Shown piece by piece: positions 16,019 through 31,281 of a stretch of 64,000 bases of DNA. The notes beneath the pieces are model-generated. The model was not told the origin of the DNA, did not search any database, and worked only from the letters and a program-made list of their open reading frames with translations. The stretch is taken from positions 1-64,000 of the IMG/VR virus record IMGVR_UViG_3300008111_000002. One strand, 5' to 3'. The stretch's first letter is position 1; the number at the start of each line of letters is the position of its first letter. The position numbers were made by a program, and so were the translations under genes.

Positions 16019-16076
16019 TATTTACGATTTTGGCAAAAAAATAATAAGTTAAGTTAATTTTTTGAAGCGATAAATA
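16019..16076. promoter_or_regulatory. Back-to-back T4-late-like promoters (GTAAATA on minus at 16019-16025; GATAAATA on plus at 16069-16076)
   Basis: Both sit in the divergent intergenic gap and match the TAAATA motif found before many structural genes. Confidence 0.6.
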
Positions 16077-16625: not shown

Positions 16626-17346
16626 CGAAGGACTACGTCCTGGAGATCTACAAGATCTTATCGAACCAACATTTTATGTAGATAAATTTCGATCTAAAAT
16701 GGGAGAAGATCGCGATGTCTGTGTGGTTAGCTTTTTAGTTAAAGATAGACTACCTGCCAGAGACATGATGGAATTTATTGAAAAAGGATATCAGTTTGTT
16801 TTAGACGCCGATGTTAGTAGTGGAGAAGACAACAATGGCGGATACACTGTGTTTGTAGAATTAGAAAGACAGGCCGATCTTCATAAAAATATTAAAGAAA
16901 TTATAGAAGGATTAAAACGTCTAACAAAAATTAATGAATGGAGTTTTAGATATCATAAAAACTTCGAAACTCACGAACTAGGCGAAAATTTAGAAAAAGT
17001 TATTCCTAATAATGCCAACGAATATGACGGATTAATGACTAGGATTAAAACAGAGAGTATTAAAAAGTTTTTTAATAAAACTTTAATGGATGATCTAAAG
17101 TTAAACAGTGACATTATAACTATCTACAAACCTTTTAATCAAAAATTACAGTTTAAATTAGTTGCTCAAGATAGTATTGAAAACATTCTTGAGGGAGCGA
17201 CTTCACAAATACAAGTAGACGACAAAAGCATGAGTGAGGTATTTTGGCTTACTAAAGTTATTGGAGACTACGGTATCACAAAAATAGGTAATCAGTTCTT
17301 ACTAACAAATAAGAACGAATCATTAATGGTGGAGAGACTAATATGA
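16603..17346 (+). CDS. Hypothetical protein
   Basis: Probable start is ATG 16603 (MLKQQQLNEG...); couples to the endolysin gene by an ATGA overlap. Confidence 0.65.
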   Translation: MLKQQQLNEGLRPGDLQDLIEPTFYVDKFRSKMGEDRDVCVVSFLVKDRLPARDMMEFIEKGYQFVLDADVSSGEDNNGGYTVFVELERQADLHKNIKEIIEGLKRLTKINEWSFRYHKNFETHELGENLEKVIPNNANEYDGLMTRIKTESIKKFFNKTLMDDLKLNSDIITIYKPFNQKLQFKLVAQDSIENILEGATSQIQVDDKSMSEVFWLTKVIGDYGITKIGNQFLLTNKNESLMVERLI

Positions 17347-17972
17347 GTTTTACATTTGAATTTACAAAAGCACAACTAGGACAAATTATTCCTAAAAATC
17401 CGTACTTAAATAATTGGTACGAAGCACTACATGAAATTTTACCGGAATATGAAATTAACACTCCCAAACGTGTAGCGGCGTTTATTGCACAATGCGCACA
17501 CGAGTCTGGAAATTTCTTATTCCTAAAAGAAAATTTAAACTACAAAGCAGAAAGCCTAGTAAAGGTATTTCCAAAATACTTTCCTAGCATGGATATTGCA
17601 CAGCAATATGCTAAAAAACCAGAAAAAATTGCCAACAGAGTTTATGCAAGTCGTATGGGCAACGGTGACGAATCCAGCGGCGACGGTTGGAAGTTTTGTG
17701 GTCGTGGATTAATTCAATTAACTGGTAAAAATAATTACACATTTTTTGCTGCCAGTATTGGAGTGGATCTAAACGAAGCAGCAGAATATCTACAGACATT
17801 TGAAGGTGCTGTTCAGTCAGCATGTTTCTTTTGGGAAAATACAAAATTAAATAAAGAAGCAGATGAAGGTGATATCAAGACCATGACTAAAAAAATCAAT
17901 GGTGGATTTATTGGTCTAGACGATCGTATCAAACACTATGAACATGCCCTGCATGTATTTGGAGCTCACTAA
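17343..17972 (+). CDS. Glycoside hydrolase family 19 endolysin
   Basis: AAFIAQCAHESG, GDGWKFCGRGLIQLTGKNNY, INGGFIGLDDR motifs. Confidence 0.92.
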   Translation: MSFTFEFTKAQLGQIIPKNPYLNNWYEALHEILPEYEINTPKRVAAFIAQCAHESGNFLFLKENLNYKAESLVKVFPKYFPSMDIAQQYAKKPEKIANRVYASRMGNGDESSGDGWKFCGRGLIQLTGKNNYTFFAASIGVDLNEAAEYLQTFEGAVQSACFFWENTKLNKEADEGDIKTMTKKINGGFIGLDDRIKHYEHALHVFGAH

Positions 17973-20154: not shown

Positions 20155-20997
20155 ATGGATTACTATTCAACCCTTGGATTACAGAGAGGTGCTTCTCAAG
20201 AAGAAATTAAAAAAGCTTACAGAAGCATGGCAATGAAACATCACCCAGATCGTGGTGGTAACGAAAAAACATTTAAAGAAATCAGTCAAGCATACGATGT
20301 ACTAACCGATCCACAGAAAAAACAAATGGTTGACATGGGAATGGATCCTCTTAATCCGCACCAACAACATCATCACGGCGGACAACAATTTCATTTTAAT
20401 ACAGGAAACTTTGAGGATATATTTTCTCAATTTGGATTTAATCCCTTTGGCAGTTTTCAGCAACAACAACGTAGAAAAAATTCTAGTATACAAGTAGCTG
20501 TAGAAATTACTCTTTTAGATGTACTAAATGGTAAATCTATGGAAGCTGAAATTGGAATGCCTAACGGACAACGTAAATTAGTAACAATTAATATTCCAGC
20601 CGGAGTTCATCATGGACAACAAATAAAATATGGAGGCATGGGAGATAGTTCTATTCCACACATTCCACCCGGCGATTTACTAGTCAATATAAAAATAAAA
20701 TCAGACGATATCTTTCAACGCGATGGAAATAATTTAATTTGTGAATGGAAGATGCCTGTTTGGGATGCAATTCTAGGAAACAGTATTAATATCAAAACTA
20801 TAGATGATAGAACTATTAATATTAATATTCCTCCAGGAACACAGCCAGACACTATGTTTAGTTGTTCAGGAGAAGGACTACCAGATGTACATACAAAAAT
20901 CAAAGGTAAACTGTTAGTCAAAATTAAAATTGGAATTCCTAAAAATCTAACCCAAGAACAACGAGATCTAATACTAAAAATAAAACATGGAATTTAA
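20155..20997 (+). CDS. dnaJ: DnaJ/CbpA-type chaperone (J-domain plus C-terminal domain, no Zn finger)
   Basis: DYYSTLG...EIKKAYRSMAMKHHPDRGG (HPD motif), G/F-rich linker, PGDLLV. Confidence 0.93.
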   Translation: MDYYSTLGLQRGASQEEIKKAYRSMAMKHHPDRGGNEKTFKEISQAYDVLTDPQKKQMVDMGMDPLNPHQQHHHGGQQFHFNTGNFEDIFSQFGFNPFGSFQQQQRRKNSSIQVAVEITLLDVLNGKSMEAEIGMPNGQRKLVTINIPAGVHHGQQIKYGGMGDSSIPHIPPGDLLVNIKIKSDDIFQRDGNNLICEWKMPVWDAILGNSINIKTIDDRTININIPPGTQPDTMFSCSGEGLPDVHTKIKGKLLVKIKIGIPKNLTQEQRDLILKIKHGI

Positions 20998-21484
20998 ACT
21001 AGGAGCTCACGAAAGTCTCATAACTACCAGCTCAAATTGGGACTTTGACAAAGACGGTAATGCTGAAGAATTTGAAAAATCAATGATTGAATTTATGGTT
21101 GCTAATCACGGAATAGGACTAGCGGCTAATCAAATTGGTATTACTAAGCGAGTATTTGTAATTGGTAGCATTAACATTCCTGGATTTCCAGAACCATTTG
21201 CTGTGTTTAATCCTGTAATTACAGAATACAGCAAAGATCAAAATGTAGATAAAGAAGGTTGCTTAAGTTATCCTAATCTGTGGTTAACTGTTAAACGACC
21301 AGAATGGATTGTTACACAATATCAAGATTCTAAAGGAAACTATCATGAAGTAAAAATAGATGGTTATCTTGCTAGATGTTTTCAACACGAATACGATCAT
21401 CTTAATGGTGTGTGCTTTGTAGACAAAGTATCCCAGATGAAGTTACAATTAGCTATGAAGAAACTAAGGAAACAAAAACAATGA
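20987..21484 (+). CDS. def: Peptide deformylase
   Basis: GIGLAANQIG, EGCLS and QHEYDHLNG motifs are all present. Confidence 0.95.
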   Translation: MEFKLGAHESLITTSSNWDFDKDGNAEEFEKSMIEFMVANHGIGLAANQIGITKRVFVIGSINIPGFPEPFAVFNPVITEYSKDQNVDKEGCLSYPNLWLTVKRPEWIVTQYQDSKGNYHEVKIDGYLARCFQHEYDHLNGVCFVDKVSQMKLQLAMKKLRKQKQ

Positions 21485-23781
21485 TCCAACCTAGTGAATC
21501 ACTACAAGCAATCTTTGAAAGATCTATTAAGATTGCTAAAGATAATAGTCACGAGTATATTACCATTGAACATATACTGTACAGTATTATGCTTGATGAA
21601 CCATCCTATAAAGTTATTGAGAACTTTGGAGCAGATGCAGAGTTTATTAAAACAAACTTAGATGCATTTGTTAAAAACAATCTTGATGATTTAAAAAGCA
21701 CTATTGTTGATCGTCCAAAGAAAACTAATAGTGTAGAGCGTGTTTTAAATAGATGTTTTACACAGGTATTGTTTAGCGGACGTCAACATATTGAACCCAT
21801 CGATGTTCTTATAAGTATTTTAAGTGAAAAGAATTCTTTTGCATTTTACTTCTTAACTAAATCTGGCGTCGTTAAAGATAAATTTGTCAAGTATTTCCAC
21901 GAAAACTTTAACGAAGAAGAAAACGAAATTGAAACACAACTAACGAATCCTAATCAAGTGGAAAAAATAATCAATACATTCTGCACTAATCTTTCATTGC
22001 AGGCCAAACAAAAGAAAATTGATCCTGTAATTGGCAGAGATGAAGAATTAGAAAAAGTACAATTAGTACTGGCAAGACGTAATAAGTGCAATGTTCTCAT
22101 GGTAGGCGATCCCGGTGTAGGTAAGACTGCCATTGCAGAGGGACTGGCACGTAAGATTCACGAAAAGAAAGTTCCTAAGTTTATTCAAGACCATACTGTT
22201 TATACTCTTGATATCAGTGCATTGTTAGCTGGTAGTAAGTATAGAGGTGACTTTGAAGAGCGTGTTAAAGCAGTTCTTTCTGCACTTGAGAAGAAAGGTA
22301 AAATTATTCTGTTTATTGATGAAGCACACATGATGCAGGGCGCAGGTGCTGCTAATCAATCAAGCAATGATATGGCCAATATGCTTAAGCCTATTCTTAC
22401 CAAAGGTGTTATTAAACTAGTGGCGTCAACTACATGGGAAGAATATCGCAAACACTTTGAAAAAGATCGTGCATTGATGCGCAGATTTCAAAGAATTACT
22501 ATTGACGAACCTTCCGCTGAAGTATCCGTTAAAATTCTCAAAGGTGTTAAGAAGTATTATGAAAAACATCATAATGTTAAAATTACCGAAGGTGCTATTG
22601 AACAGGCAGTTAAGTTGTCAGTAAAGTATATGACTGATAAGAAACTGCCAGACAAAGCAATTGATATCCTAGACTGTGCCAGTGCTCGTTATAAATTAAA
22701 AGACGAAGACGACGGTGATGTTATCAACATTGTTGATGTAGAGCAGATTCTGTTTGAAGTCAGTAAGATGCTTAATATGCCATTAGAAAATATTGCACAG
22801 AAAGAAAGTAAAAATCTTAGCAATCTAGAAAAAAATCTCAAGACCGTAATTTTTGGTCAAGATACAGCCGTTGATAATTTGCTGGACAAAATTTTTGTTG
22901 CTCAAGCAGGAATGAAATCTCCTAATAAACCAATTGGTAGTTTCTTGTTCTTAGGACCAACTGGTTGTGGTAAAACTGAAACTGCTAAACAATTAGCAGA
23001 TAAAATGTCTATGCCGTTGATCCGTTTTGATATGAGTGAATATCAAGAAAAGCATTCAGTGGCTAAACTGATCGGTGCTCCTCCGGGTTACGTTGGATTT
23101 GAAGACAATGCTGGTCAATTAATTACCAAACTACAGGAAAATCCCAACAGTGTATTACTGTTAGATGAAATTGAAAAAGCTCATCCAGATGTCAGTAATG
23201 TGTTGTTACAGTTAATGGATAACGGTTTTGTAACTGGTTCCAATGGTAAAGTTGCAGATGCTCGAAATGTTATTTTAATTATGACCAGTAATTTAGGTGC
23301 AGCCGACAATGAGAAGAATACCATTGGTTTTGGAACACTAGAAAAAACTGGTGAAGACGATAAGGCTGTTAAGAAATTCTTTAAACCAGAATTCCGTAAT
23401 CGTTTAGATGCTGTAATCAAGTTCAGCAGTCTTAAACCAGAAGTTGTACACAGTATTGTTGAGAAGTTTATCAAAGATCTGTCAACACAAATCAAAGATA
23501 AAGGTATTGAGATCGTTGCCAACACTGATGCTATCAAATATCTAGCAGAAAAAGGTTATGACAGTAAAATGGGTGCAAGACCGTTGGCTAGAATTATCGA
23601 TAACGAAATTAAGAGTCCGCTAAGTCGTAAAATTCTGTTTGGCGAACTTCAAGCAGGTGGCAAAATTACAGTTACCGTTAATAATGGTAAGTTGGATTTT
23701 GATATTGTTGATTCAAAGAAAAAGCTTGCCAAGTCAGATGACATTATTGAATCAATTACATTTAACAATATTGTACCGTGA
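21481..23781 (+). CDS. clpA: ClpA/ClpB-family AAA+ unfoldase
   Basis: Clp N-domain, GDPGVGKT, LFIDEAH, second Walker A GPTGCGKT, FDMSEYQEKH, LIGAPPGYVG, GARPL. The short middle region suggests ClpA. Confidence 0.9.
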   Translation: MIQPSESLQAIFERSIKIAKDNSHEYITIEHILYSIMLDEPSYKVIENFGADAEFIKTNLDAFVKNNLDDLKSTIVDRPKKTNSVERVLNRCFTQVLFSGRQHIEPIDVLISILSEKNSFAFYFLTKSGVVKDKFVKYFHENFNEEENEIETQLTNPNQVEKIINTFCTNLSLQAKQKKIDPVIGRDEELEKVQLVLARRNKCNVLMVGDPGVGKTAIAEGLARKIHEKKVPKFIQDHTVYTLDISALLAGSKYRGDFEERVKAVLSALEKKGKIILFIDEAHMMQGAGAANQSSNDMANMLKPILTKGVIKLVASTTWEEYRKHFEKDRALMRRFQRITIDEPSAEVSVKILKGVKKYYEKHHNVKITEGAIEQAVKLSVKYMTDKKLPDKAIDILDCASARYKLKDEDDGDVINIVDVEQILFEVSKMLNMPLENIAQKESKNLSNLEKNLKTVIFGQDTAVDNLLDKIFVAQAGMKSPNKPIGSFLFLGPTGCGKTETAKQLADKMSMPLIRFDMSEYQEKHSVAKLIGAPPGYVGFEDNAGQLITKLQENPNSVLLLDEIEKAHPDVSNVLLQLMDNGFVTGSNGKVADARNVILIMTSNLGAADNEKNTIGFGTLEKTGEDDKAVKKFFKPEFRNRLDAVIKFSSLKPEVVHSIVEKFIKDLSTQIKDKGIEIVANTDAIKYLAEKGYDSKMGARPLARIIDNEIKSPLSRKILFGELQAGGKITVTVNNGKLDFDIVDSKKKLAKSDDIIESITFNNIVP

Positions 23782-24826: not shown

Positions 24827-24870
24827 CTTCAAACAGTAGATAAATATAGTATCATCTTACGGAAGATACT

Positions 24871-26490
24871 ATGAGAGACCTATTATCTAAATTAGACGCT
24901 ATTATTAGCGAAACACAATTAAATCCAAATGATCCCAAAGGCGATTATGAGGCTAAGAAAAAATCTTTACAGGATTTAGAAAATGATCCTGTGGCTGCAG
25001 AAGATCCAGAAATTGCCGCTGCAATTGATCAGCGTAAAACAGATCTAGAAAAAGAAGCTAAACAAAAAGGCGTTGTTGAAAATTTTGAAATTGGAGACGA
25101 GTTTGGTATTAGCTTTGCAGAAGATCTAGAAATTGGCACAACAATTACAGAGATCCTAGAAGACGGCATTGTCATTGATCTAGACGACGATGCAGTTTCA
25201 TTCCTAGAAAGTCAAGGAATTAAATTCTTTGAAGGTGAACTTGTAGAAGGTGTAGCTGGTCCTAAGAGCTGCTGGAAGGGCTACAGAAAAGTTGGTACTA
25301 AGCCAGGCACTGGTCGTAACGCAGGCAAACGTGTAAATGACTGCGAGAAAATTGGTGAAAATCTAGACGAATATTTCTTTTTTGATGATCCAAAGAAAAA
25401 AGATCGTGGGCCTAGAGATTCTGGGCATGACGAATTAGATCGACGTGCAAAATCCAAAGTAGACTTGGGCGGTAGAGATGCTAGAGATTATAAAGATGCT
25501 AAGAAAAAAGGACAGTATAAAATTTCTGGGCCTAAAGGTAAACTTCCAGAAGACCATGGTCCTGAAAATCCAGACGCAAGTTATAACGTAGGTGAGTACG
25601 ATCGCGAAGGCGATATGGCCAAAGACGATTTAAGAACTATCAATGATGCTGCTAAAGAATTATACAGCATTATCAAAGCAGACGAAAATCTACCAGAATG
25701 GGTACAGGCCAAAATTGTTAAAGCAATGGATTATTTAGACACTGCTCGCGACTACATGAAGGCTAACAAATATGCTGAAGATACAGAAGTAGACGAAGCT
25801 AGAAAACCAGCAATAAACTTTGATGGTGACGATATTCAAAAATTAATTACTATAGACGATCTGCCTACATTAAAAGCACAGGCATTTGATTTAATTTCTA
25901 AACCAAGCCAACGTCCAATGAAACCAGAAAAAGTAGAATGGTTTAAAAATGCCCTCGAAAGAATAATGGATAAGAAAGGGGTCATTAAATTAATGTATGA
26001 CCTAATGTTATCAGGTGAGGGGCATGGTGTAATTGGTACTAGATCGTCAATGGGGCAAAGTAATTACAGAAAGAGATTTGCCGATGACATAAACGAAGGT
26101 GATGTAAGCACAGGTAATCTTCAAAAGATGATGCAATACACTAATTTAATAGGAAACTATGTCGATGATCCAGAAGCCAAGAAATATGTAAATGAACTAA
26201 AATCTATGTTAAACTGGTATTTAGGTCAAGATAAAGAATCAAATGTTGATGAAGCTAAGTATCAAGGTCGTGAAGTGCCGTTAGGCAAGAAGATGGCTGG
26301 CGATGTTAAAAAATCAAAAGTATATGTACGTAAGCCAAATGGTAATATTGTCAAAGTAAACTTTGGCGATAAAAAGATGCGTATTAAAAAATCTAATCCT
26401 GCACGTAGAAAATCATTCCGTGCTAGACATAACTGCAAAAATCCAGGTCCACGTTGGAAAGCACGTTATTGGTCATGCAGGAGCTGGTAA
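24871..26490 (+). CDS. Modular late protein / putative head-internal polyprotein
   Basis: Late promoter at 24839-24846. Modules are separated by [ILV]xE sites (VVE, LVE, LDE, LPE, VDE, INE, VDE). The basic C-terminal module is KSFRARHNC...ARYWSC. Confidence 0.6.
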   Translation: MRDLLSKLDAIISETQLNPNDPKGDYEAKKKSLQDLENDPVAAEDPEIAAAIDQRKTDLEKEAKQKGVVENFEIGDEFGISFAEDLEIGTTITEILEDGIVIDLDDDAVSFLESQGIKFFEGELVEGVAGPKSCWKGYRKVGTKPGTGRNAGKRVNDCEKIGENLDEYFFFDDPKKKDRGPRDSGHDELDRRAKSKVDLGGRDARDYKDAKKKGQYKISGPKGKLPEDHGPENPDASYNVGEYDREGDMAKDDLRTINDAAKELYSIIKADENLPEWVQAKIVKAMDYLDTARDYMKANKYAEDTEVDEARKPAINFDGDDIQKLITIDDLPTLKAQAFDLISKPSQRPMKPEKVEWFKNALERIMDKKGVIKLMYDLMLSGEGHGVIGTRSSMGQSNYRKRFADDINEGDVSTGNLQKMMQYTNLIGNYVDDPEAKKYVNELKSMLNWYLGQDKESNVDEAKYQGREVPLGKKMAGDVKKSKVYVRKPNGNIVKVNFGDKKMRIKKSNPARRKSFRARHNCKNPGPRWKARYWSCRSW

Positions 26491-26843
26491 TGTTATTAAA
26501 CGAATTGTTTTCTAAATCAATAGAAGAACCTAAAAAATACGATCCAGAAGTAGATTATCTTGATGATTTAAAATTCTGGATCAGTAATAATGATGAAGCA
26601 TTATCAAAAATGATAATGCCGGCCATAACTCAACAAAAATCGCAACCAAACGAAGAATCTAACTACCAACTCTACATTAAACCGTTGGCAAAGTGCGCAG
26701 AAGATTATTGTGTGAAGTTTGATTTACTACATAGTAAAGACGAGATTTTTACTCCAGAAGCTATTGTAACTTTAGCAAAAAAAATTGCAGAAGAGCAAAG
26801 TAACTTTATTAAAAAAGGCGACTACAATAATGAGACTGTTTGA
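26490..26843 (+). CDS. Hypothetical late protein (MLLNELF start)
   Basis: TAATG coupling; N-terminus resembles neighbouring genes. Confidence 0.6.
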   Translation: MLLNELFSKSIEEPKKYDPEVDYLDDLKFWISNNDEALSKMIMPAITQQKSQPNEESNYQLYIKPLAKCAEDYCVKFDLLHSKDEIFTPEAIVTLAKKIAEEQSNFIKKGDYNNETV

Positions 26844-27468
26844 ATTCTTAGATAAAATGAACGAACAGGATGATGATAATTACCCACGTCCTGTTGATGA
26901 ATTAAAAAAACTTATCGCTATTACAGAACAACAAAAAGATGTTGTTGAAAGTCTTGCCCGAGAAGCACAAAAGATTACTACAGAAATCAAGTACGATCAA
27001 ACAGTACAAGACATTGTGAGTAGAATTAGACAATTAGCAGAAAAAATTACCTTTGAAGATAAAGGATACAAAAGCGAAATTGAGTCAGCAATCGATGATG
27101 CATTAAACGCAATGAATGAACTTGAGTCGGCTGTGTATCAAATTGACGAACCATTTAAAGATCTATTAAGAGCATTAGATAATGAAGTGCTTGAATTAGA
27201 ATATGAAATGGATGAACACAAATGGAAAAGAGAATCTGCTGATCCAAAATTAACAATGCCTAAACAAAGAGATCCTAATTGGAAAACTATGCAGGCCAAA
27301 GGTTCTAGTGGTGCTGCTGGCGCACATAGAGATAAAAAGAAAGAACAAAAACAGGGTTACGAAAAACATAGAGCGAAAAGCATGGCCGAAGGGCATGGAC
27401 GATACTGGTGTTCTACAGATAAGAAATGGAAAACACGCAAAGGCCCTAAACAAACTCGTAGTTCATGA
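26830..27468 (+). CDS. Hypothetical late protein (MRLFEFLD start; acidic coiled coil plus basic tail)
   Basis: Probable start is ATG 26830. Confidence 0.6.
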   Translation: MRLFEFLDKMNEQDDDNYPRPVDELKKLIAITEQQKDVVESLAREAQKITTEIKYDQTVQDIVSRIRQLAEKITFEDKGYKSEIESAIDDALNAMNELESAVYQIDEPFKDLLRALDNEVLELEYEMDEHKWKRESADPKLTMPKQRDPNWKTMQAKGSSGAAGAHRDKKKEQKQGYEKHRAKSMAEGHGRYWCSTDKKWKTRKGPKQTRSS

Positions 27469-27770
27469 AACAATATAGAATTACTTCAGAAAATTCCAAA
27501 AATTTAGATAGCACTGATGATTGCTATCTGGATCCTAGCGATCCTATACACGAAATAAAAAGAATGCAATACCTTGGCGGACTTGGTGCACAGGCAAGAC
27601 TACAAGAATATAAGATAGAGCAACAAGGTAGCAATATTTCTGTAACAGGGATGGAAAAACAACAGTTAGAAAAGAAACACAAGATTAAACCAGGAACACC
27701 GGAATGGTTTCAATTATGGTTTAGTCTACCTTACATGACTGGAGAAAAACCTGTAGGAGATAAAAAATGA
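27465..27770 (+). CDS. Hypothetical protein
   Basis: ATGA overlaps on both sides. Confidence 0.6.
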
Positions 27771-28093
27771 TTGAAGTATCTGAATCAGCTAAAGCAAAAG
27801 TTATTGATCTATTAAATGAAGAAAATAATCCCGATCTTATGTTGAGAACATTTGTTCAAGGTGGCGGATGCAGTGGTTTTCAATACGGTTTTACATTTGA
27901 CGAAATTAAATCAGACGACGATTTTGAAATAAATTTAGATACAAAATGGAAATTAGTTATAGATTCTATGAGTATGCAATATCTCACTGGTGCAATAATT
28001 GACTATACAGAAGATTTAAATGGCAGTCAGTTTACAATTAAAAATCCCAATGCACAAACAACCTGCGGCTGTGGATCTAGTTTTTCAGTTTAA
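27767..28093 (+). CDS. erpA: A-type Fe-S cluster carrier (IscA/ErpA/HesB family)
   Basis: GGGCSGFQY and [14 protein letters not shown] motifs. Confidence 0.92.
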
Positions 28094-28095
28094 TT

Positions 28096-28254
28096 ATGGA
28101 CAAAACTCTCAAAGACTACATTGATAGAACTAACAAGCGTTTAGCGGAGGAACGTAAAGTTCCCTCAACACCCAACCCTAATCAATATCCCGTTCAACCA
28201 GAACAAAAAAATCCAGATTCTGACGAAAAAATTAATCCATACGGACAACATTAA
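28096..28254 (+). CDS. Small hypothetical protein (52 aa)
   Basis: MDKTLKDYIDRTNKRLAEERKV...; TAATG-coupled to the next gene. Confidence 0.5.
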   Translation: MDKTLKDYIDRTNKRLAEERKVPSTPNPNQYPVQPEQKNPDSDEKINPYGQH

Positions 28255-29582
28255 TGAGAGCCAAAGAATTCATTACTGAAAACTTTGCTGACGGTAAAGT
28301 CAAAGGCAAAAGTCGCCCAGGCCGTGTAAAACGTGCAGGTGCCAGTTGTTCTGGTTCAGTAACTGATCTTCGCAAACGTGCTAAAAATGCATCTGGCGAA
28401 CGAGCCAAAATGTATCACTGGTGCGCCAACATGAAAAGCGGACGTAATGAATCCGTTGAAGAAGGTTGGAAAGAAGCCGAAGACATCAAATTATCATTTG
28501 AAGAAGGATACTTCGCTATAGAAAATACTCCAGAAGGAATATTGGTCTACGGAGAAGATGTTAGGTTCACTGATGATAAAGCATGGGTGGATTTTGTTTA
28601 TAATTTGTCTAAGGATGAAATTGTAAATTATAAAGTAAGTCACGGGTACAATGGTAGTTACGACTATGATTTTGACTACATAAAAACAACCATTGACGAG
28701 ATCGCAGATGAAATTAAACGAAGTTATGGAACTACGTGGGACGAAATCAGCGACGAGTTACATGGCGGATTAAGTGTAGATGAAGGTTGGAAAGATTGGG
28801 TAGCAGGAGCTGCATTAGGAGCTGCTGCATTAACTTCGCAGGCTAAACCAATTATTGTTCAGCAGCACGTAGAACCAGGCGATACGGTCTATTCTATAGC
28901 TAGACAAAATAATGTTGATCCTAAAGAAATTATGAAATTAAATAATTTCAATAAAGATACAAAATTAAAAAAAGGTCAAATGGTTAAGGTACCTGACTAT
29001 TCTAAACCAGTAGATACTAAACCAGAAGTTAAAAAAATAACAAAACCAGAAAAAATAGATAAAAAATTAGATATTTCAAATACTGTCACCGGCACCAAAC
29101 ATGAAGCAATATTAAGACACTATGCTAATAAAGCTAATATCAAAGGAAACGAATTAGTTGCATTTTTAGCACAAGTAGCACACGAGACCATGGATTTTAA
29201 ACACATGGCAGAGATTGGTGGCAGTTTAGATTTTAAAAAGTATGATATTAGATTTGCTCCAGGCAAGGCAAAGCAATTAGGTAATACTGAACCAGGTGAT
29301 GGCGCTAAGTTTAAAGGTAGGGGATACATTCAACTAACTGGCAGATACAATTATGCCAAAGCAGGAGAAGCATTAGGTCTACCACTAGAGAAAAAACCAG
29401 AGCTAGTTGAGAAGCCAGAAATAGCTGCCAAGGTAGCAATATGGTATTGGAAGAACAGAGTTAAACCTAATGTAGATGATTTTAAAGATGTTAAGGGTGT
29501 AACCAAACCAATCAATCCAGGGTTAAAAGGATTAGAAGATAGGAAAGAAAAATATCAAGCGTATAAGGTAGCCGTCAAATGA
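28254..29582 (+). CDS. Modular LysM + GH19 peptidoglycan hydrolase, probably virion-associated
   Basis: LysM (HVEPGDTVYSIARQNNVDPKEIMKLNNF...LKKGQMVKVP) and GH19 (AFLAQVAHET, GDGAKFKGRGYIQLTGRYNY, INPGLKGLEDR). N-terminus is MRAKEFITE. Confidence 0.85.
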   Translation: MRAKEFITENFADGKVKGKSRPGRVKRAGASCSGSVTDLRKRAKNASGERAKMYHWCANMKSGRNESVEEGWKEAEDIKLSFEEGYFAIENTPEGILVYGEDVRFTDDKAWVDFVYNLSKDEIVNYKVSHGYNGSYDYDFDYIKTTIDEIADEIKRSYGTTWDEISDELHGGLSVDEGWKDWVAGAALGAAALTSQAKPIIVQQHVEPGDTVYSIARQNNVDPKEIMKLNNFNKDTKLKKGQMVKVPDYSKPVDTKPEVKKITKPEKIDKKLDISNTVTGTKHEAILRHYANKANIKGNELVAFLAQVAHETMDFKHMAEIGGSLDFKKYDIRFAPGKAKQLGNTEPGDGAKFKGRGYIQLTGRYNYAKAGEALGLPLEKKPELVEKPEIAAKVAIWYWKNRVKPNVDDFKDVKGVTKPINPGLKGLEDRKEKYQAYKVAVK

Positions 29583-30226
29583 GAGCTCGAGAAATATTAC
29601 CAGAAAAGTGGAGTACAAAATATAAACGCTCTATAAATTGTTCTAATCCTAAAGGATTTAGTCAAAAGGCGCACTGTGCTGGCCGTAAGAAAAATGAAAG
29701 CAGCAGCGAAGAAGAAGTTTATAGCAAAGAAAATAACTGGGGATTATCTTCAGAAGATGCCGAGCATTTGCTTCATCAACTAGATGATCCTGAATACAAT
29801 ATAACTAGAGAGTTCGATGATTATCCCGGATTTGAATATATGTATGAATATTACACTCAGCATTTTTCCGGAGGACAATATTTTTACGATATTCTCAAAG
29901 ATGCATTAGAAGATATTAAAGACGGATATCTTGAAATAGACAAAGATGTTGACGAGGGTTGGAAAAGCAAAATGGCCGGTGCTGCGTTAGCTGCTGCCAA
30001 TTTATTAGGAAGTCCTGCCCAGGCTACAGAAGAACCAGTCAAACCTATCACTATTGCCTACGTGATGATTGACGGTGAAATGAGAAAATATAATCTTGGT
30101 GATAGATTTTCTGATGCTAGAGAAGCAGAAAAATTTATCAGCGGAGTCTTGGACAAGCAAGGTTTACAAGGATATCAATTAGAAATTAAACATGGATATC
30201 CTAAAAAGAAAGATGGTGAAAAATGA
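29579..30226 (+). CDS. Modular late protein (basic N-module, acidic middle, EGWK-AGAAL module)
   Basis: MRAREILPE start; CSNPKGFSQKAHCAGRKK; shares EGWK..AGAAL with the previous gene. Confidence 0.6.
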   Translation: MRAREILPEKWSTKYKRSINCSNPKGFSQKAHCAGRKKNESSSEEEVYSKENNWGLSSEDAEHLLHQLDDPEYNITREFDDYPGFEYMYEYYTQHFSGGQYFYDILKDALEDIKDGYLEIDKDVDEGWKSKMAGAALAAANLLGSPAQATEEPVKPITIAYVMIDGEMRKYNLGDRFSDAREAEKFISGVLDKQGLQGYQLEIKHGYPKKKDGEK

Positions 30227-31011
30227 GAGCCAAAGAGTTTGTTACGGAAAGAATGAAAACTACATGGGTTCGACCGTGGATATCTTCTGCTGTGACAAAA
30301 ATTGGTAATTATAAAAATGATTTAGAATGGTACAATAAGTTTTTTAAAAATTTAAATGCCAGCCAAGAACTTAAACAATGGGCTGAACAGGCTCTAAATC
30401 GTCCGTTAACAATCAAGCCAAAGTTATTAGATCAACCTAATAATCCATTGGCTGCTATAGAAGCAGATCACGAAATTAGCGGCGATCCAATTAAGCATAC
30501 AATTACCATAGAAGTTAATGTAGCACATGCGCCTACAGATGAAAAAACTGCTGTTAATTTCATAGACAGACTTAGTTCTTTATTAATACACGAATTAAAT
30601 CATGCTAGCCAGCGTAGTGGACAAATTAAAAAATCCAAAGACGATGACAGTGTTTATGATATTGAAACAGATGTTTGGAAAAAGACTCCTCCAAAAGCAT
30701 TAACTAAACGAGACGAGTATTATCTGTATATGTTAAACAATATGGAGCGAGATGCTTGGATCAGTCAAATTGCCAACGATATATACAACAAACTTGGAAA
30801 AGATAGTTTAGGCAATTTAAACAACATACTAAAACAGTCACAGCGTGAAGATTATGCAGTAATTGGTAGCAAAATAGTACAAGTTCCAAATTTAAAAGCG
30901 TTATGGGATGCTATTAACTATTATGGTAGATTTTTAAAATACAGCAAAGAAGATACGTGGAATAAGGTTAAAAAAGAACTATATAGCTATCTATCCAAAT
31001 ACGGTAAATAA
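30223..31011 (+). CDS. Late protein with HExxH (zincin-like) motif
   Basis: MRAKEFVTE start; LIHELNHAS, with a downstream MERDAW. Confidence 0.55.
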   Translation: MRAKEFVTERMKTTWVRPWISSAVTKIGNYKNDLEWYNKFFKNLNASQELKQWAEQALNRPLTIKPKLLDQPNNPLAAIEADHEISGDPIKHTITIEVNVAHAPTDEKTAVNFIDRLSSLLIHELNHASQRSGQIKKSKDDDSVYDIETDVWKKTPPKALTKRDEYYLYMLNNMERDAWISQIANDIYNKLGKDSLGNLNNILKQSQREDYAVIGSKIVQVPNLKALWDAINYYGRFLKYSKEDTWNKVKKELYSYLSKYGK

Positions 31012-31017
31012 TATATT

Positions 31018-31281
31018 ATGAAAATTAAAGAGATACTCGAGTCTGCTACGGCTGGTGCAACTTCCGCAGGAAGTATTGCTACTGTACCAAACCCGCATAT
31101 TAGCCCTGGTAAAGCTAGGGGTAAAAAAAGTTATTTGGGTAATCCCTGGGGCGGAATCAGTGGTACTAAAGCACCCCCTCAACCCAAAGTAAAACAGTTA
31201 AAAAATAAAGACGGAACAGCCAAAAATGCACTAGATCAAAGCACTAGTTTATTTGGTGAAGGCAATTACGTCAAAAGATAA
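31018..31281 (+). CDS. Small late protein (MKIKEILE start)
   Basis: Preceded by GGTAAATA (31003-31010). Confidence 0.6.
   Translation: MKIKEILESATAGATSAGSIATVPNPHISPGKARGKKSYLGNPWGGISGTKAPPQPKVKQLKNKDGTAKNALDQSTSLFGEGNYVKR

What the first reader, a model, noticed from the sequence alone, without database searches (positions are those of the whole stretch)
28461..29975. Acidic cassettes inserted between E|GWK junctions; a 14-bp direct repeat flanks one
Seen: GAAGGTTGGAAAGA at 28461-28474 and 28782-28795 brackets an in-frame 107-codon Asp/Glu/Tyr-rich segment. The next gene has a similar acidic block ending VDE|GWKSKMAGAALAAA, matching VDE|GWKDWVAGAALGAAA. Inference: the putative cleavage-site codons double as recombination joints, so acidic modules (possible DNA-mimic anti-defence peptides, by analogy with Ocr/Arn) can be swapped into polyproteins and released on head maturation.
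Basis: partly seen in the sequence, partly recalled or inferred. Interest (0 to 1): 0.65.

Follow-up and report, generated by a model that had tools for sequence, protein, structure and literature searches.

The report
Shuffled cargo polyproteins of a T4-like phage
The two genes belong to a row of phage proteins built from interchangeable modules, each apparently tagged for loading into the virus head and joined by sites that match the head protease, so the "acidic cassettes" are real swappable domains, although nothing shows that they mimic DNA.

Summary
The 14-nt repeat lies at 28461 and 28782 and brackets 107 in-frame codons, and gene B has a third E|GWK joint.

The window comes from a T4-like myovirus that encodes a gp21-type prohead protease. 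Genes A (28254-29582), B (29579-30226), C and D start with a 9-residue tag (MRAKEFITE) like the T4 capsid-targeting sequence (MKTYQEFIAE). They are chains of separately conserved modules.

Before ten different module types (193 distinct contexts), the preceding residue is Glu in 190 and P3 is V/I/L/M/F in 169. This is the T4-type protease motif, and it also occurs at the phage's own capsid maturation site.

Modules are gained, lost, permuted and swapped exactly at these joints. In a syntenic relative (L137), gene B's acidic module sits in front of gene A's LysM-GH19 payload, and the DNA switch lies inside GA(A/G)GG(A/T)TGGAAA.

The repeat itself is not an insertion scar. GWKE is the A-type acidic module's own N-terminus, and synonymous sites at joints follow ordinary codon usage.

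The two acidic modules are unrelated folded domains (one alpha/beta, one helical) that match no solved fold, Ocr and Arn included.

GWK mostly begins signal-peptide-like segments that cleavage would expose.

Cleavage and packaging are inferred, not shown.

The parts
24840..24846 (+). ATAAATA, a late-promoter-like motif 24 nt upstream of the first gene of the cluster
   Evidence: 28 of the 32 ATAAATA in the 209.8-kb genome lie 4-48 nt upstream of an ORF start. These include the tail-sheath-like, gp67-position and large structural ORFs.
24871..26490 (+). First modular gene of the cluster (539 aa). Relatives of it carry the A-type acidic module as an insert.
   Evidence: P0004, P0010 and P0020 share its N- and C-terminal modules and also contain the A-type acidic domain. 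The C-terminal basic Cys module matches phrog_7595.
26830..27468 (+). Modular gene starting MRLFEF and ending in the terminal basic module E|GHGRYWCSTDKKW...
   Evidence: The same terminal module closes many polyproteins in relatives and is always preceded by x-x-E.
28254..29582 (+). Gene A, a 442-aa polyprotein: tag, basic module, A-type acidic module, signal-like segment, LysM, GH19
   Evidence: ORF. Pfam LysM E=1.9e-11 and Glyco_hydro_19 E=2.6e-13. PHROG endolysin E=1.4e-43.
28254..28280 (+). CTS-like tag MRAKEFITE (residues 1-9), ending in I-T-E
   Evidence: T4 ipII and ipIII start MKTYQEFIAE. The same kind of tag heads 192 of 1055 ORFs in related loci, against 0.44% of internal Met positions, and is followed by at least 51 different first modules.
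28281..28463 (+). Basic Cys-containing module (residues 10-70, net +10), ending in V-E-E
   Evidence: It is 84-94% identical in dozens of loci. There it occurs as a stand-alone 66-aa tagged ORF or at the C-terminus of other proteins. In L137 it sits at the end of the neighbouring gene, with 88% nt identity.
28461..28474 (+). Joint 1, first copy of the 14-nt repeat (E|GWKE)
   Evidence: GWKE(A/S)E is the A-type module's own start in P0001, P0002 and L087.
28464..28784 (+). A-type acidic module (residues 71-177), a folded alpha/beta domain
   Evidence: There are 23 homologue clusters among 1.84 billion representatives, at varying positions in proteins of 62-1532 aa. Alignment A1. AF2 pLDDT 87.9 and pTM 0.79, with 5 strands and 2 helices. 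No fold match.
28782..28795 (+). Joint 2, second copy of the repeat (E|GWKD), at the boundary between the acidic module and the payload
   Evidence: Nucleotide homology to L137 starts here, and the same sharp boundary appears in L024/L026, L011/L005 and L019/L021.
28785..28844 (+). Signal-peptide-like or SAR-like segment GWKDWVAGAALGAAALTSQA (residues 178-197)
   Evidence: There are 43 distinct such segments, each directly after E|. They have 9-19 (median 16) uncharged Ala/Gly-rich residues, and 41 of 43 have A-x-A.
28869..28994 (+). LysM domain
   Evidence: Pfam PF01476 at residues 206-247.
29133..29468 (+). GH19 muramidase/chitinase-type catalytic domain
   Evidence: Pfam PF00182 at residues 294-405. 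phrog_181 at residues 244-438.
29579..30226 (+). Gene B, a 215-aa polyprotein: tag, basic Cys module, B-type acidic module, signal-like segment, small domain
   Evidence: Modules are mapped by their relatives.
29606..29698 (+). Basic Cys module KWSTKYKRSINCSNPKGFSQKAHC... (residues 10-40, net +8)
   Evidence: It is conserved in cultured cyanomyoviruses and forms the C-terminal end of S-SM2 gene SSM2_108. In L137 it ends a different gene.
29699..29956 (+). B-type acidic module (residues 41-126), a five-helix domain
   Evidence: Alignment A2. AF2 pLDDT 83 and pTM 0.75. No fold match. It stands alone with a tag in L104 and is fused to the GH19 payload in P0034, P0035 and L137.
29954..29965 (+). 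Joint 3, GAGGGTTGGAAA (E|GWK)
   Evidence: Homology of the B-type acidic module to L137 ends exactly here.
29957..30223 (+). Signal-like segment (residues 127-149, ...SPAQA) plus a small domain. In relatives this unit is an internal module of long polyproteins.
   Evidence: It is 78-91% identical at internal positions of proteins of 412 to more than 1117 aa, and its order relative to other modules is permuted. Its homologue in L137 carries a Tat-type signal instead.
30223..31011 (+). Gene C, tag MRAKEFVTE plus a 250-aa body containing an HExxH motif
   Evidence: No Pfam or PHROG match. Syntenic in L137.
31018..31281 (+). Gene D, whose start MKIKEILE|SATAGATSAG copies the capsid protein's predicted maturation site
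   Evidence: The capsid protein reads YLSE|SATAGATSAG, which aligns with the T4 gp23 site LTE65|A. This is the largest tag group in relatives, with 31 ORFs.

Best explanation
Genes A and B are two of a tandem row of late-expressed, head-targeted modular polyproteins of a T4-like myovirus.

Each starts with a roughly 9-residue tag of the T4 capsid-targeting type. Each is a chain of independently folding modules joined by short linkers that end in hydrophobic-x-Glu, the cut site of T4-type prohead proteases. Gene A carries a small basic Cys module, an acidic domain and then an export-signal-like segment with LysM-GH19. Gene B carries a basic module, an acidic domain and then a signal-like segment with a small domain.

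E|GWK is one recurrent form of this joint. E is P1. GWK is the start of the next module, usually the n-region of a signal-peptide-like segment and, in one family, the start of the A-type acidic domain.

Inferred mechanism: the tag brings the whole chain into the prohead core. The gp21-type protease then cuts at the joints and frees the modules. The retained modules leave with the DNA at infection, and cleavage exposes N-terminal export or membrane-insertion signals on the GH19 and small-domain payloads.

Because every module begins and ends at an equivalent in-frame joint, any exchange at a joint gives a functional new chain. Modules, including both acidic ones, are therefore shuffled between genes and genomes.

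Shown: the anatomy, the joint motif, the shuffling and the chimeric joint. Inferred: packaging, cleavage, ejection and the role of the acidic domains, which I take to be injected effector or inhibitor proteins with unknown targets.
For: The phage is T4-like. It has a PF03420 prohead protease (E=2.8e-24) with the His, Ser and Asp aligned to T4 gp21 conserved. It also has a gp23-type capsid protein whose predicted maturation site L-S-E|S aligns with T4 L-T-E65|A.

The tag resembles a CTS. Compare MRAKEFITE, MRAREILPE and MRAKEFVTE with T4 MKTYQEFIAE in ipII and ipIII. Both phages' scaffold proteins begin with the same kind of sequence. The tag heads 18% of ORFs in related loci against 0.44% of internal Met positions, in front of at least 51 unrelated first modules.

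The joints fit the protease motif: P1 is Glu in 190 of 193 distinct contexts before 10 module types, P3 is aliphatic or aromatic in 169 of 193, and P2 is free.

The modules are autonomous. The basic module occurs alone, N-terminally or C-terminally. Each acidic module occurs alone behind a tag (P0001, L104). Module order is permuted between L047 and L099. Both acidic modules fold confidently on their own.

Swapping happens at the joint. P0034 has an 85%-identical payload behind a B-type instead of an A-type acidic module. L023 has no acidic module. L137 is syntenic and chimeric, with the nucleotide switch inside the joint. Identity jumps sharply at the joint in three further pairs.

The cluster lies downstream of a late-promoter-like motif that is shared with structural genes.

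Literature: T4 CTS function and the Glu-specific cleavage by T4, phiKZ and SPN3US proteases (PMC9026906 and PMC5694885).
Against: There are no proteomic or biochemical data, so neither packaging nor any cleavage is demonstrated.

The tag is short. [LIVMF]-x-E is common by chance: gene A has 7 such sites, some inside the GH19 fold.

Where the signal-like segment lies near the N-terminus (L034, L037, L137 gene B'), export from the producing cell could work without any packaging.

My module starts were chosen after I had seen the pattern, so that count is partly circular.

T4 internal proteins are single-module. No paper describing such polyproteins was found, so there is no precedent to lean on.
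Confidence: 0.65

Rival explanations
1. The proteins are not cleaved or packaged. They are multidomain exported or membrane-anchored proteins made for the producing cell. Gene A would be a type II or SAR-like endolysin whose Gly/Ala-rich segment is a signal anchor, with N-terminal cytoplasmic regulatory domains. The Glu-ending linkers would be ordinary interdomain linkers, and the shared N-terminus would be a translation or regulatory feature.
For: The segment after E|GWK is Gly/Ala-rich, like SAR domains, and is followed by LysM-GH19. A homologue of gene B's payload has a Tat-type signal only 12 residues from its N-terminus. In T4, the endolysin gene e lies next to ipIII and ipII, so a lysis role for this locus is conceivable.
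Against: The same tag heads many proteins that have no hydrophobic segment at all. The hydrophobic segments occur as late as residue 1400 of 1520 and are always immediately preceded by hydrophobic-x-Glu. The residues upstream of the segment are net acidic, which is unlike a signal n-region unless they are removed. A second, plain GH19 without a tag or signal is available as the ordinary endolysin. Permuted module order fits independent units better than one folded membrane protein.
Confidence: 0.15
2. This is the first reader's specific reading: the acidic modules are DNA-mimic anti-defence proteins of the Ocr/Arn type, delivered with the DNA.
For: Both modules are strongly acidic, with net charge -18 and -20 and pI about 4.1. 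Each can stand alone behind a head-targeting-like tag. T4 IPI*, an injected internal protein, is an anti-restriction factor (PMC3012670). The locus turns over quickly.
Against: Neither model resembles any solved fold, known DNA mimics included. The best VIA Z scores are 6.0 and 4.6, and Foldseek gives no match with E below 0.07. The conserved positions of the A-type domain are largely non-acidic, for example NTPEG and YGTTW. Acidity has other explanations, as in the next rival. No binding or phenotype data exist.
Confidence: 0.1
3. The acidic modules are charge-balancing pro-domains or core filler. They would neutralise the very basic neighbouring modules in the precursor, or act like the acidic T4 core proteins gp67 and gp68, and would be expelled from the head after cleavage rather than injected.
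For: In genes A and B, and in most homologues, the acidic module lies next to strongly basic modules. T4 gp67 has a highly acidic tail. Core fragments are cleared from T4 heads after cleavage (PMC9026906).
Against: Both modules are well-conserved, specifically folded domains of 86-107 aa, not low-complexity acidic tracts. Each also occurs without any basic partner (P0034, P0035 and L104).
Confidence: 0.2

Closest known systems
T4 internal proteins IPI, IPII, IPIII and Alt with their capsid targeting sequence, and the variable internal-protein loci of T-even phages
   Same: The phage is T4-like and has a gp21-type protease. A roughly 10-residue N-terminal tag resembles the scaffold's N-terminus and ends in aliphatic-x-Glu. 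The tag is conserved while the bodies behind it are unrelated and turn over quickly. The genes lie next to a lysozyme-type gene, as in the T4 order e-ipIII-ipII.
   Different: T4 internal proteins are single small proteins with one cut (Alt has two). Here one tag carries chains of 2 to 6 or more modules, enzymes included, with a cut motif at every joint. Modules move between positions within and between genes, and some carry export-type signals that only cleavage would make N-terminal.
Multiply processed head and ejection proteins of giant phages (phiKZ, 201phi2-1, SPN3US)
   Same: The prohead protease is homologous to T4 gp21 and cuts after Glu in an x-X-E motif. Long propeptides carry several candidate sites, and many packaged proteins enter the host (PMC5694885).
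   Different: In those phages the cuts remove propeptides from dedicated proteins. A combinatorial, shuffled set of modules with uniform joints has not been described there.
Motif-mediated modular shuffling in T4-type phages (PeSL cassettes; conserved motifs in tail-fibre adhesin genes)
   Same: Short conserved sequences flank exchangeable units, and exchange boundaries fall within them (PMC2839356 and its citation of Tetart et al. 1998).
   Different: PeSLs are intergenic promoter and terminator cassettes. Here the joint is in frame, only about 12-27 nt long, and under protein-level selection as a cleavage site. Its synonymous sites are not specially conserved.
SAR or signal-anchored endolysins, and virion-associated peptidoglycan hydrolases such as T7 gp16
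   Same: A muralytic domain (GH19 with LysM) lies behind a Gly/Ala-rich weakly hydrophobic segment. T7 gp16 is a precedent for a head-internal muralytic ejection protein (from my own knowledge).
   Different: The hydrophobic segment is internal (residue 178), behind a tag, a basic module and an acidic module. The phage has a second, plain GH19.
DNA-mimic anti-restriction proteins (Ocr, ArdA, Arn)
   Same: Small, strongly acidic and phage-encoded.
   Different: There is no sequence or fold similarity. The two acidic modules have different folds from each other.

Membership tests
T4-type CTS-directed internal head proteins | The phage encodes a T4 gp21-family prohead protease with intact catalytic residues | tested here: met
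   PF03420 E=2.8e-24, above the cut-off. The His, Ser and Asp aligned with T4 gp21 are conserved.
T4-type CTS-directed internal head proteins | An N-terminal tag of about 10 residues resembling the CTS and scaffold N-terminus and ending in aliphatic-x-Glu | tested here: met
   MRAKEFITE against T4 MKTYQEFIAE. Scaffold N-termini. About 40-fold enrichment at ORF starts.
T4-type CTS-directed internal head proteins | A conserved tag on otherwise unrelated, fast-evolving bodies in a variable locus | tested here: met
   At least 51 different first modules follow the tag. The mosaic between the window and its syntenic relative L137 is shown.
T4-type CTS-directed internal head proteins | Protein physically present in proheads and virions and cut by the protease | not testable with these tools
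   This needs virion mass spectrometry or in vitro cleavage.
T4-type CTS-directed internal head proteins | Expression compatible with head assembly | tested here: inconclusive
   ATAAATA at 24840 heads the cluster and marks structural genes elsewhere. However, promoter activity and the absence of terminators before gene A were not tested.
DNA-mimic anti-restriction proteins (Ocr/ArdA/Arn) | Strongly negative surface charge | tested here: met
   Net -18 over 107 aa and -20 over 86 aa, with pI about 4.1.
DNA-mimic anti-restriction proteins (Ocr/ArdA/Arn) | Fold or sequence related to a known DNA mimic | tested here: not met
   No such match in Foldseek PDB or BFVD, VIA-align wide or the Atlas. 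No Pfam or PHROG family.
DNA-mimic anti-restriction proteins (Ocr/ArdA/Arn) | Binds and inhibits DNA-targeting defence enzymes | not testable with these tools
   This needs an experiment.
Insertion with target-site duplication | The flanking direct repeat is created by the insertion and is not part of the inserted unit elsewhere | tested here: not met
   GWKE(A/S)E begins the A-type module directly after a CTS in P0001 and after a different module in P0002. Joint codons vary as in the background.
SAR / signal-anchor endolysins | GH-type muralytic domain | tested here: met
   PF00182 and phrog_181 endolysin.
SAR / signal-anchor endolysins | The weakly hydrophobic Gly/Ala-rich segment lies at the extreme N-terminus of the translated protein | tested here: not met
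   The segment starts at residue 178 in gene A and between residues 14 and 1400 in relatives.
Sec/Tat signal peptides | n-h-c organisation with small-x-small at the end, or a twin-arginine motif | tested here: met
   A-x-A is present in 41 of 43 segments. SRRNFLKF in the L137 homologue gives a weak PF10518 hit, and that region aligns with gene B's segment. No dedicated signal-peptide predictor was available.
Sec/Tat signal peptides | Located at the N-terminus of the polypeptide presented to the translocon | tested here: inconclusive
   This holds only if the joint is cleaved, which was not shown.

The most novel reading that the evidence does not exclude
Head maturation acts as an unmasking step. 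The prohead protease cuts head-loaded polyproteins so that several cargo proteins, including a LysM-GH19 wall hydrolase, acquire N-terminal Sec- or Tat-type signals. After ejection into a new host, these proteins would be exported to the periplasm or inserted into the inner membrane by the host's own machinery. That would make them virion-delivered, periplasm-directed effectors, assembled combinatorially by exchange at the uniform protease joints.
Probability: 0.2. Interest if true: 0.85.

Novelty: new variant of a known kind. Interest (0 to 1): 0.72.

Why it matters
If the inference holds, a widespread group of environmental T4-like phages (hundreds of IMG/VR contigs, with module relatives in cultured cyanomyoviruses) loads its heads with chains of interchangeable modules behind a single targeting tag, rather than with a few fixed internal proteins. 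The prohead protease motif would serve as a universal in-frame connector.

That would explain how injected protein repertoires diversify so quickly. It would supply a sequence rule (tag plus hydrophobic-x-Glu joints) for predicting packaged cargo from metagenomes. It would also point to many unstudied candidate host-takeover or anti-defence domains, the two acidic ones among them.

The signal-like segments placed exactly after the joints raise a testable new idea: proteolysis in the head may prepare cargo for export in the next host.

Tried and rejected
1. Insertion scar or target-site duplication for the 14-bp repeat. Rejected, because the upstream GWKE is intrinsic to the A-type module.

2. 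Nucleotide-level conservation of the joint. Across 32 distinct EGWK joints, GAA is used 81% of the time (background 83%), GGT 62% (42%) and AAA 78% (71%). That gives at most a weak GGT excess, so there is no case for selection on the DNA as such.

3. Homology between the two acidic blocks. hhalign probability is 0.8%.

4. Acidic blocks as disordered linkers. Rejected by confident AF2 models and conserved motifs.

5. Fold-based function for the acidic modules. Foldseek PDB and BFVD, VIA-align wide, the Atlas by structure and the Atlas by features all gave only noise-level rows. Weak rows such as PepSY, cystatin and anti-CRISPR are not evidence.

6. A generic homology-breakpoint statistic from all-against-all BLAST was noisy. 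The motif fell within 3 residues of left breakpoints in 29% of cases against 13.5% at random, and 10.9% of right ends were exact. The module-start logo is the cleaner test.

7. The canonical T4 late promoter TATAAATA is absent from the window (0 found, 10.4 expected). The shorter ATAAATA behaves as the promoter-like motif.

8. The GH19 protein of cyanophage S-B68, the best phage-database match, has a different, tape-measure-like 839-aa architecture without the tag.

9. Megablast of the region against sequenced phages found nothing.

10. Literature searches for CTS polyproteins in cyanophage or other T4-likes found nothing relevant.

Not used: read mapping, complex prediction, alternative genetic codes. 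The costly exhaustive protein search was used once, for the A-type acidic module, because family scans and 80 related loci had left it without any relative.
Full report
**Observation**

The 14-mer GAAGGTTGGAAAGA occurs exactly twice in the window, at 28461 and 28782. About 0.05 matches are expected by chance. The copies are 321 nt apart and in frame within the 442-aa ORF 28254-29582, here called gene A.
- The bracketed 107 residues carry 27 Asp+Glu, 9 Lys+Arg and 9 Tyr, with pI 4.1.
- The overlapping next ORF, gene B (29579-30226), has an acidic stretch at residues 41-126 with net charge -20. It ends in DVDE|GWKSK followed by an Ala-rich segment, parallel to SVDE|GWKDW plus an Ala-rich segment in gene A.
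- Gene B's joint is GAGGGTTGGAAA.

The description is therefore accurate.

**Genome context**

The window is the first 64 kb of a 209.8-kb IMG/VR viral contig with 36.8% G+C. The phage is T4-like.
- It has a Peptidase_S77 (gp21-type) prohead protease, and the His, Ser and Asp that align with T4 gp21 are conserved.
- It has a gp23-type capsid protein and a portal, core and scaffold gene order like T4's.
- In the window it has a T4 DsbA-like protein and a family B DNA polymerase.
- Its capsid protein reads YLSE|SATAG where T4 gp23 has its known maturation site LTE65|A. PMC9026906 states that 65 residues are removed.

**Anatomy of the two genes**

Gene A has these parts:
- residues 1-9: MRAKEFITE
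- residues 10-70: a very basic Cys-containing module (net +10), ending in VEE
- residues 71-177: the acidic segment, ending in VDE
- residues 178-197: an Ala/Gly-rich uncharged segment, ending in SQA
- then LysM (206-247) and a GH19 domain

Gene B has these parts:
- residues 1-9: MRAREILPE
- residues 10-40: a basic Cys module
- residues 41-126: an acidic module
- residues 127-149: a signal-like segment, ending in AQA
- then a small domain

Genes C (MRAKEFVTE...) and D (MKIKEILE|SATAGATSAG...) follow with overlapping stop and start codons. Gene D's start copies the capsid protein's maturation site.

**The N-terminal tag**

T4 ipII and ipIII begin MKTYQEFIAE, and T4 gp22 begins MLKEQLIAE. This phage's scaffold begins MLDLVKQLFE. 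The first 10 residues of IPIII are the T4 capsid targeting sequence; residues 4 and 7 matter for targeting and residues 8 and 10 for processing (PMC9026906).

In 130 related loci, 192 of 1055 distinct + strand ORFs begin with this kind of tag, against 20 of 4498 internal Met positions. What follows the tag falls into at least 51 unrelated groups. In the phage's own genome the pattern picks out genes A-D, two further ORFs and the scaffold gene itself.

**The joints**

I took ten different modules that are recognisable by their conserved first residues and tabulated what precedes them in 193 distinct sequence contexts.
- P1 is Glu in 190.
- P3 is V/I/L/M/F in 169.
- P2 is free.

This is the motif of T4-type prohead proteases, which all cut after Glu (PMC5694885). 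One caveat is that I chose the module starts after seeing the pattern. The flanks do differ while the Glu does not.

**Modularity and exchange**

- *Basic module of gene A.* It is 84-94% identical in dozens of contigs. There it is a stand-alone tagged 66-aa ORF, often right after the GH19 gene, or the C-terminal end of other proteins.
- *GH19 payload.* GH19 orthologues carry very different sets of modules between the tag and E|GWKDW: a Gly/Tyr-rich module, a small helical module, HAD-like and GNAT-like enzymes, or none.
- *Gene B's last module.* It lies inside polyproteins of 412 to more than 1117 aa, and its order relative to another module is inverted between L047 and L099, L052 and L102.
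- *A-type acidic module.* It has 23 homologue clusters among 1.84 billion representatives, at positions from residue 9 to beyond 400.
- *B-type acidic module.* It stands alone behind a tag in L104. In P0034 and P0035 it directly precedes a payload 85% and 77% identical to gene A's.
- *L023.* It joins a basic module straight to E|GWKDW with no acidic module.

**The decisive comparison**

L137 is a contig syntenic with the window, from the IscA-like gene to the DNA polymerase. Nucleotide matches between the two show a mosaic:

| Window segment | Content | Counterpart in L137 |
|---|---|---|
| 28278-28441 | basic module of gene A | C-terminal end of the neighbouring gene B' (88% identity) |
| 28442-28767 | A-type acidic module | none |
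| 28768-29586 | joint 2 plus payload | gene A' |
| 29603-29710 | basic module of gene B | end of a third gene |
| 29711-29965 | B-type acidic module, up to and including EGWK | front of gene A' |

The two matches to gene A' overlap by 27 nt at its joint. The four-way DNA alignment shows the switch from gene-B-like to gene-A-like sequence inside GA(A/G)GG(A/T)TGGAAA.

Three further pairs with 89-97% identical payloads but unrelated upstream modules change from random to near-complete nucleotide identity within a codon or two of the joint. Cassette exchange at E|GWK is therefore real.

**What the 14-bp repeat is not**

- *Not an insertion scar.* The upstream GWKE is the A-type module's own beginning. 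It follows a CTS directly in P0001, follows a different module in P0002, and recurs in L087.
- *No special conservation of the joint DNA.* Across 32 distinct EGWK joints, synonymous choices track background codon usage apart from a mild GGT excess. From those frequencies, two such peptides would be nucleotide-identical about 13% of the time (my calculation).
- *Crossover site unresolved.* A sharp boundary in pairwise comparisons marks where unlike modules were once joined. Later spread can go through ordinary homologous recombination in the flanking tag and payload. Whether the 12-27 nt of joint microhomology drives exchange, or selection simply keeps only in-frame joint-to-joint products, is open.

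**The acidic modules**

They are two different domains, with hhalign probability 0.8%.
- A-type: five strands and two helices, pLDDT 87.9.
- B-type: five helices, pLDDT 83.

Neither matches a solved or predicted fold above noise. The best VIA Z scores are 6.0 and 4.6, and Foldseek gives nothing with E below 0.07. Known DNA mimics do not appear in any list.

They usually sit beside very basic modules, although not always. I take them to be independent cargo proteins of unknown target. The DNA-mimic idea is unsupported but not excluded, and a charge-balancing or core-filler role is a live alternative.

**The GWK segments**

There are 43 distinct segments that follow E| directly. They have 9-19 (median 16) uncharged Ala/Gly-rich residues, and 41 contain A-x-A before a polar stretch. 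They lie anywhere from residue 14 to residue 1400.

The homologue of gene B's payload in L137 carries SRRNFLKF, a twin-arginine type signal with a weak PF10518 hit, aligned to gene B's segment. The residues upstream of the joints are acidic, so only cleavage would create a normal signal n-region.

This suggests, but does not show, that maturation exposes export or membrane-insertion signals on ejected proteins. A muralytic ejection protein would have a functional parallel in T7 gp16 (my own knowledge). The window also encodes a plain GH19 without tag or signal (17343-17972), which is the more likely lysis enzyme.

**Expression**

Of the 32 ATAAATA in the genome, 28 lie 4-48 nt upstream of ORF starts. 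These include structural genes, the first gene of this cluster (24840) and the gene after it (31278). The genes in between are tightly packed. This fits late expression but was not tested further.

**Comparison and novelty**

The closest known system is the T4 CTS with its variable internal proteins, together with the multiply cleaved head proteins of phiKZ-like phages and motif-mediated shuffling in T4-type genomes.

Relative to what I could find, three things are new:
- one tag carrying chains of shuffled modules
- a uniform protease joint as the in-frame connector
- export-type signals placed exactly after joints

I file it as a new variant of a known kind. Cleavage, packaging and ejection remain inferences.

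**Limits**

- No proteomics was available.
- No signal-peptide predictor was available.
- Alignment depth for the B-type model is small (9 sequences at about 70% identity).
- Loci were chosen through similarity to genes A and B, so frequencies describe this clade only.

Noticed in passing
window 31018-31281: Gene D (87 aa) starts MKIKEILE|SATAGATSAGSIATV, which nearly copies the capsid protein's predicted maturation site and new N-terminus (YLSE|SATAGATSAGNVATL). This is the commonest tagged ORF type in relatives (31 ORFs, matching phrog_17311). It may be a decoy, a competitor or a capsid-associated peptide.
   Followed up: partly
whole genome G000; window 24840, 31278, 10525, 16070, 24445, 41476, 49525: ATAAATA is rare (32 copies), and 28 of them lie 4-48 nt upstream of ORF starts, so it is probably the late-promoter core. 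The full T4 consensus TATAAATA is absent from the window (0 found, 10.4 expected).
   Followed up: partly
window 30223-31011: Gene C carries the same tag (MRAKEFVTE) and an HExxH motif (HELNH) in an otherwise unassigned 262-aa protein. It is conserved in the syntenic relative L137 and may be a packaged metallopeptidase.
   Followed up: no
window 17343-17972: There is a second GH19 protein (209 aa) without a tag, signal or LysM, downstream of an ATAAATA at 16070. It is probably the ordinary endolysin.
   Followed up: partly
L137 2006-2527 (P0039): In the syntenic relative, the gene at gene B's position has a twin-arginine type signal (SRRNFLKF...) 12 residues after the start. A homologous small domain follows, and then gene A's basic module forms its C-terminus.
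   Followed up: partly
window 29606-29698; L131 (Synechococcus phage S-SM2 91376-91804): The basic Cys module (KYKxSIxCSNPKGFSQ.AHC) is conserved in cultured T4-like cyanophages. In S-SM2 it ends a 142-aa protein that starts MKTLKQFLKE and lies between the terminase subunit genes. Tagged modular proteins may therefore extend to the Kyanoviridae.
   Followed up: partly
window 20987-21484, 21412-23781, 27767-28093: Auxiliary genes lie next to the cluster: a peptide deformylase, a 789-aa two-AAA+ Clp-type ATPase (phrog_4871) and an IscA-like Fe-S assembly protein.
   Followed up: no
window 28096-28257: An unlisted 53-aa ORF fills the apparent gap before gene A. Its stop codon overlaps gene A's start (TAATG), and L137 has a 49-aa ORF at the same place.
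   Followed up: no
G000 114560-115203 (L001 1420-2061): The prohead protease homologue itself carries YLSE near its N-terminus, the same four residues as the capsid maturation site. This echoes the LIE-9 site noted for T4 gp21.
   Followed up: no
G000 153997, 105411, 184335: Further ORFs outside the window have CTS-like starts: MKTFKEYLAE (with ATAAATA 5 nt upstream), MKVKDLIVE and MRAKEFIFE.
   Followed up: no
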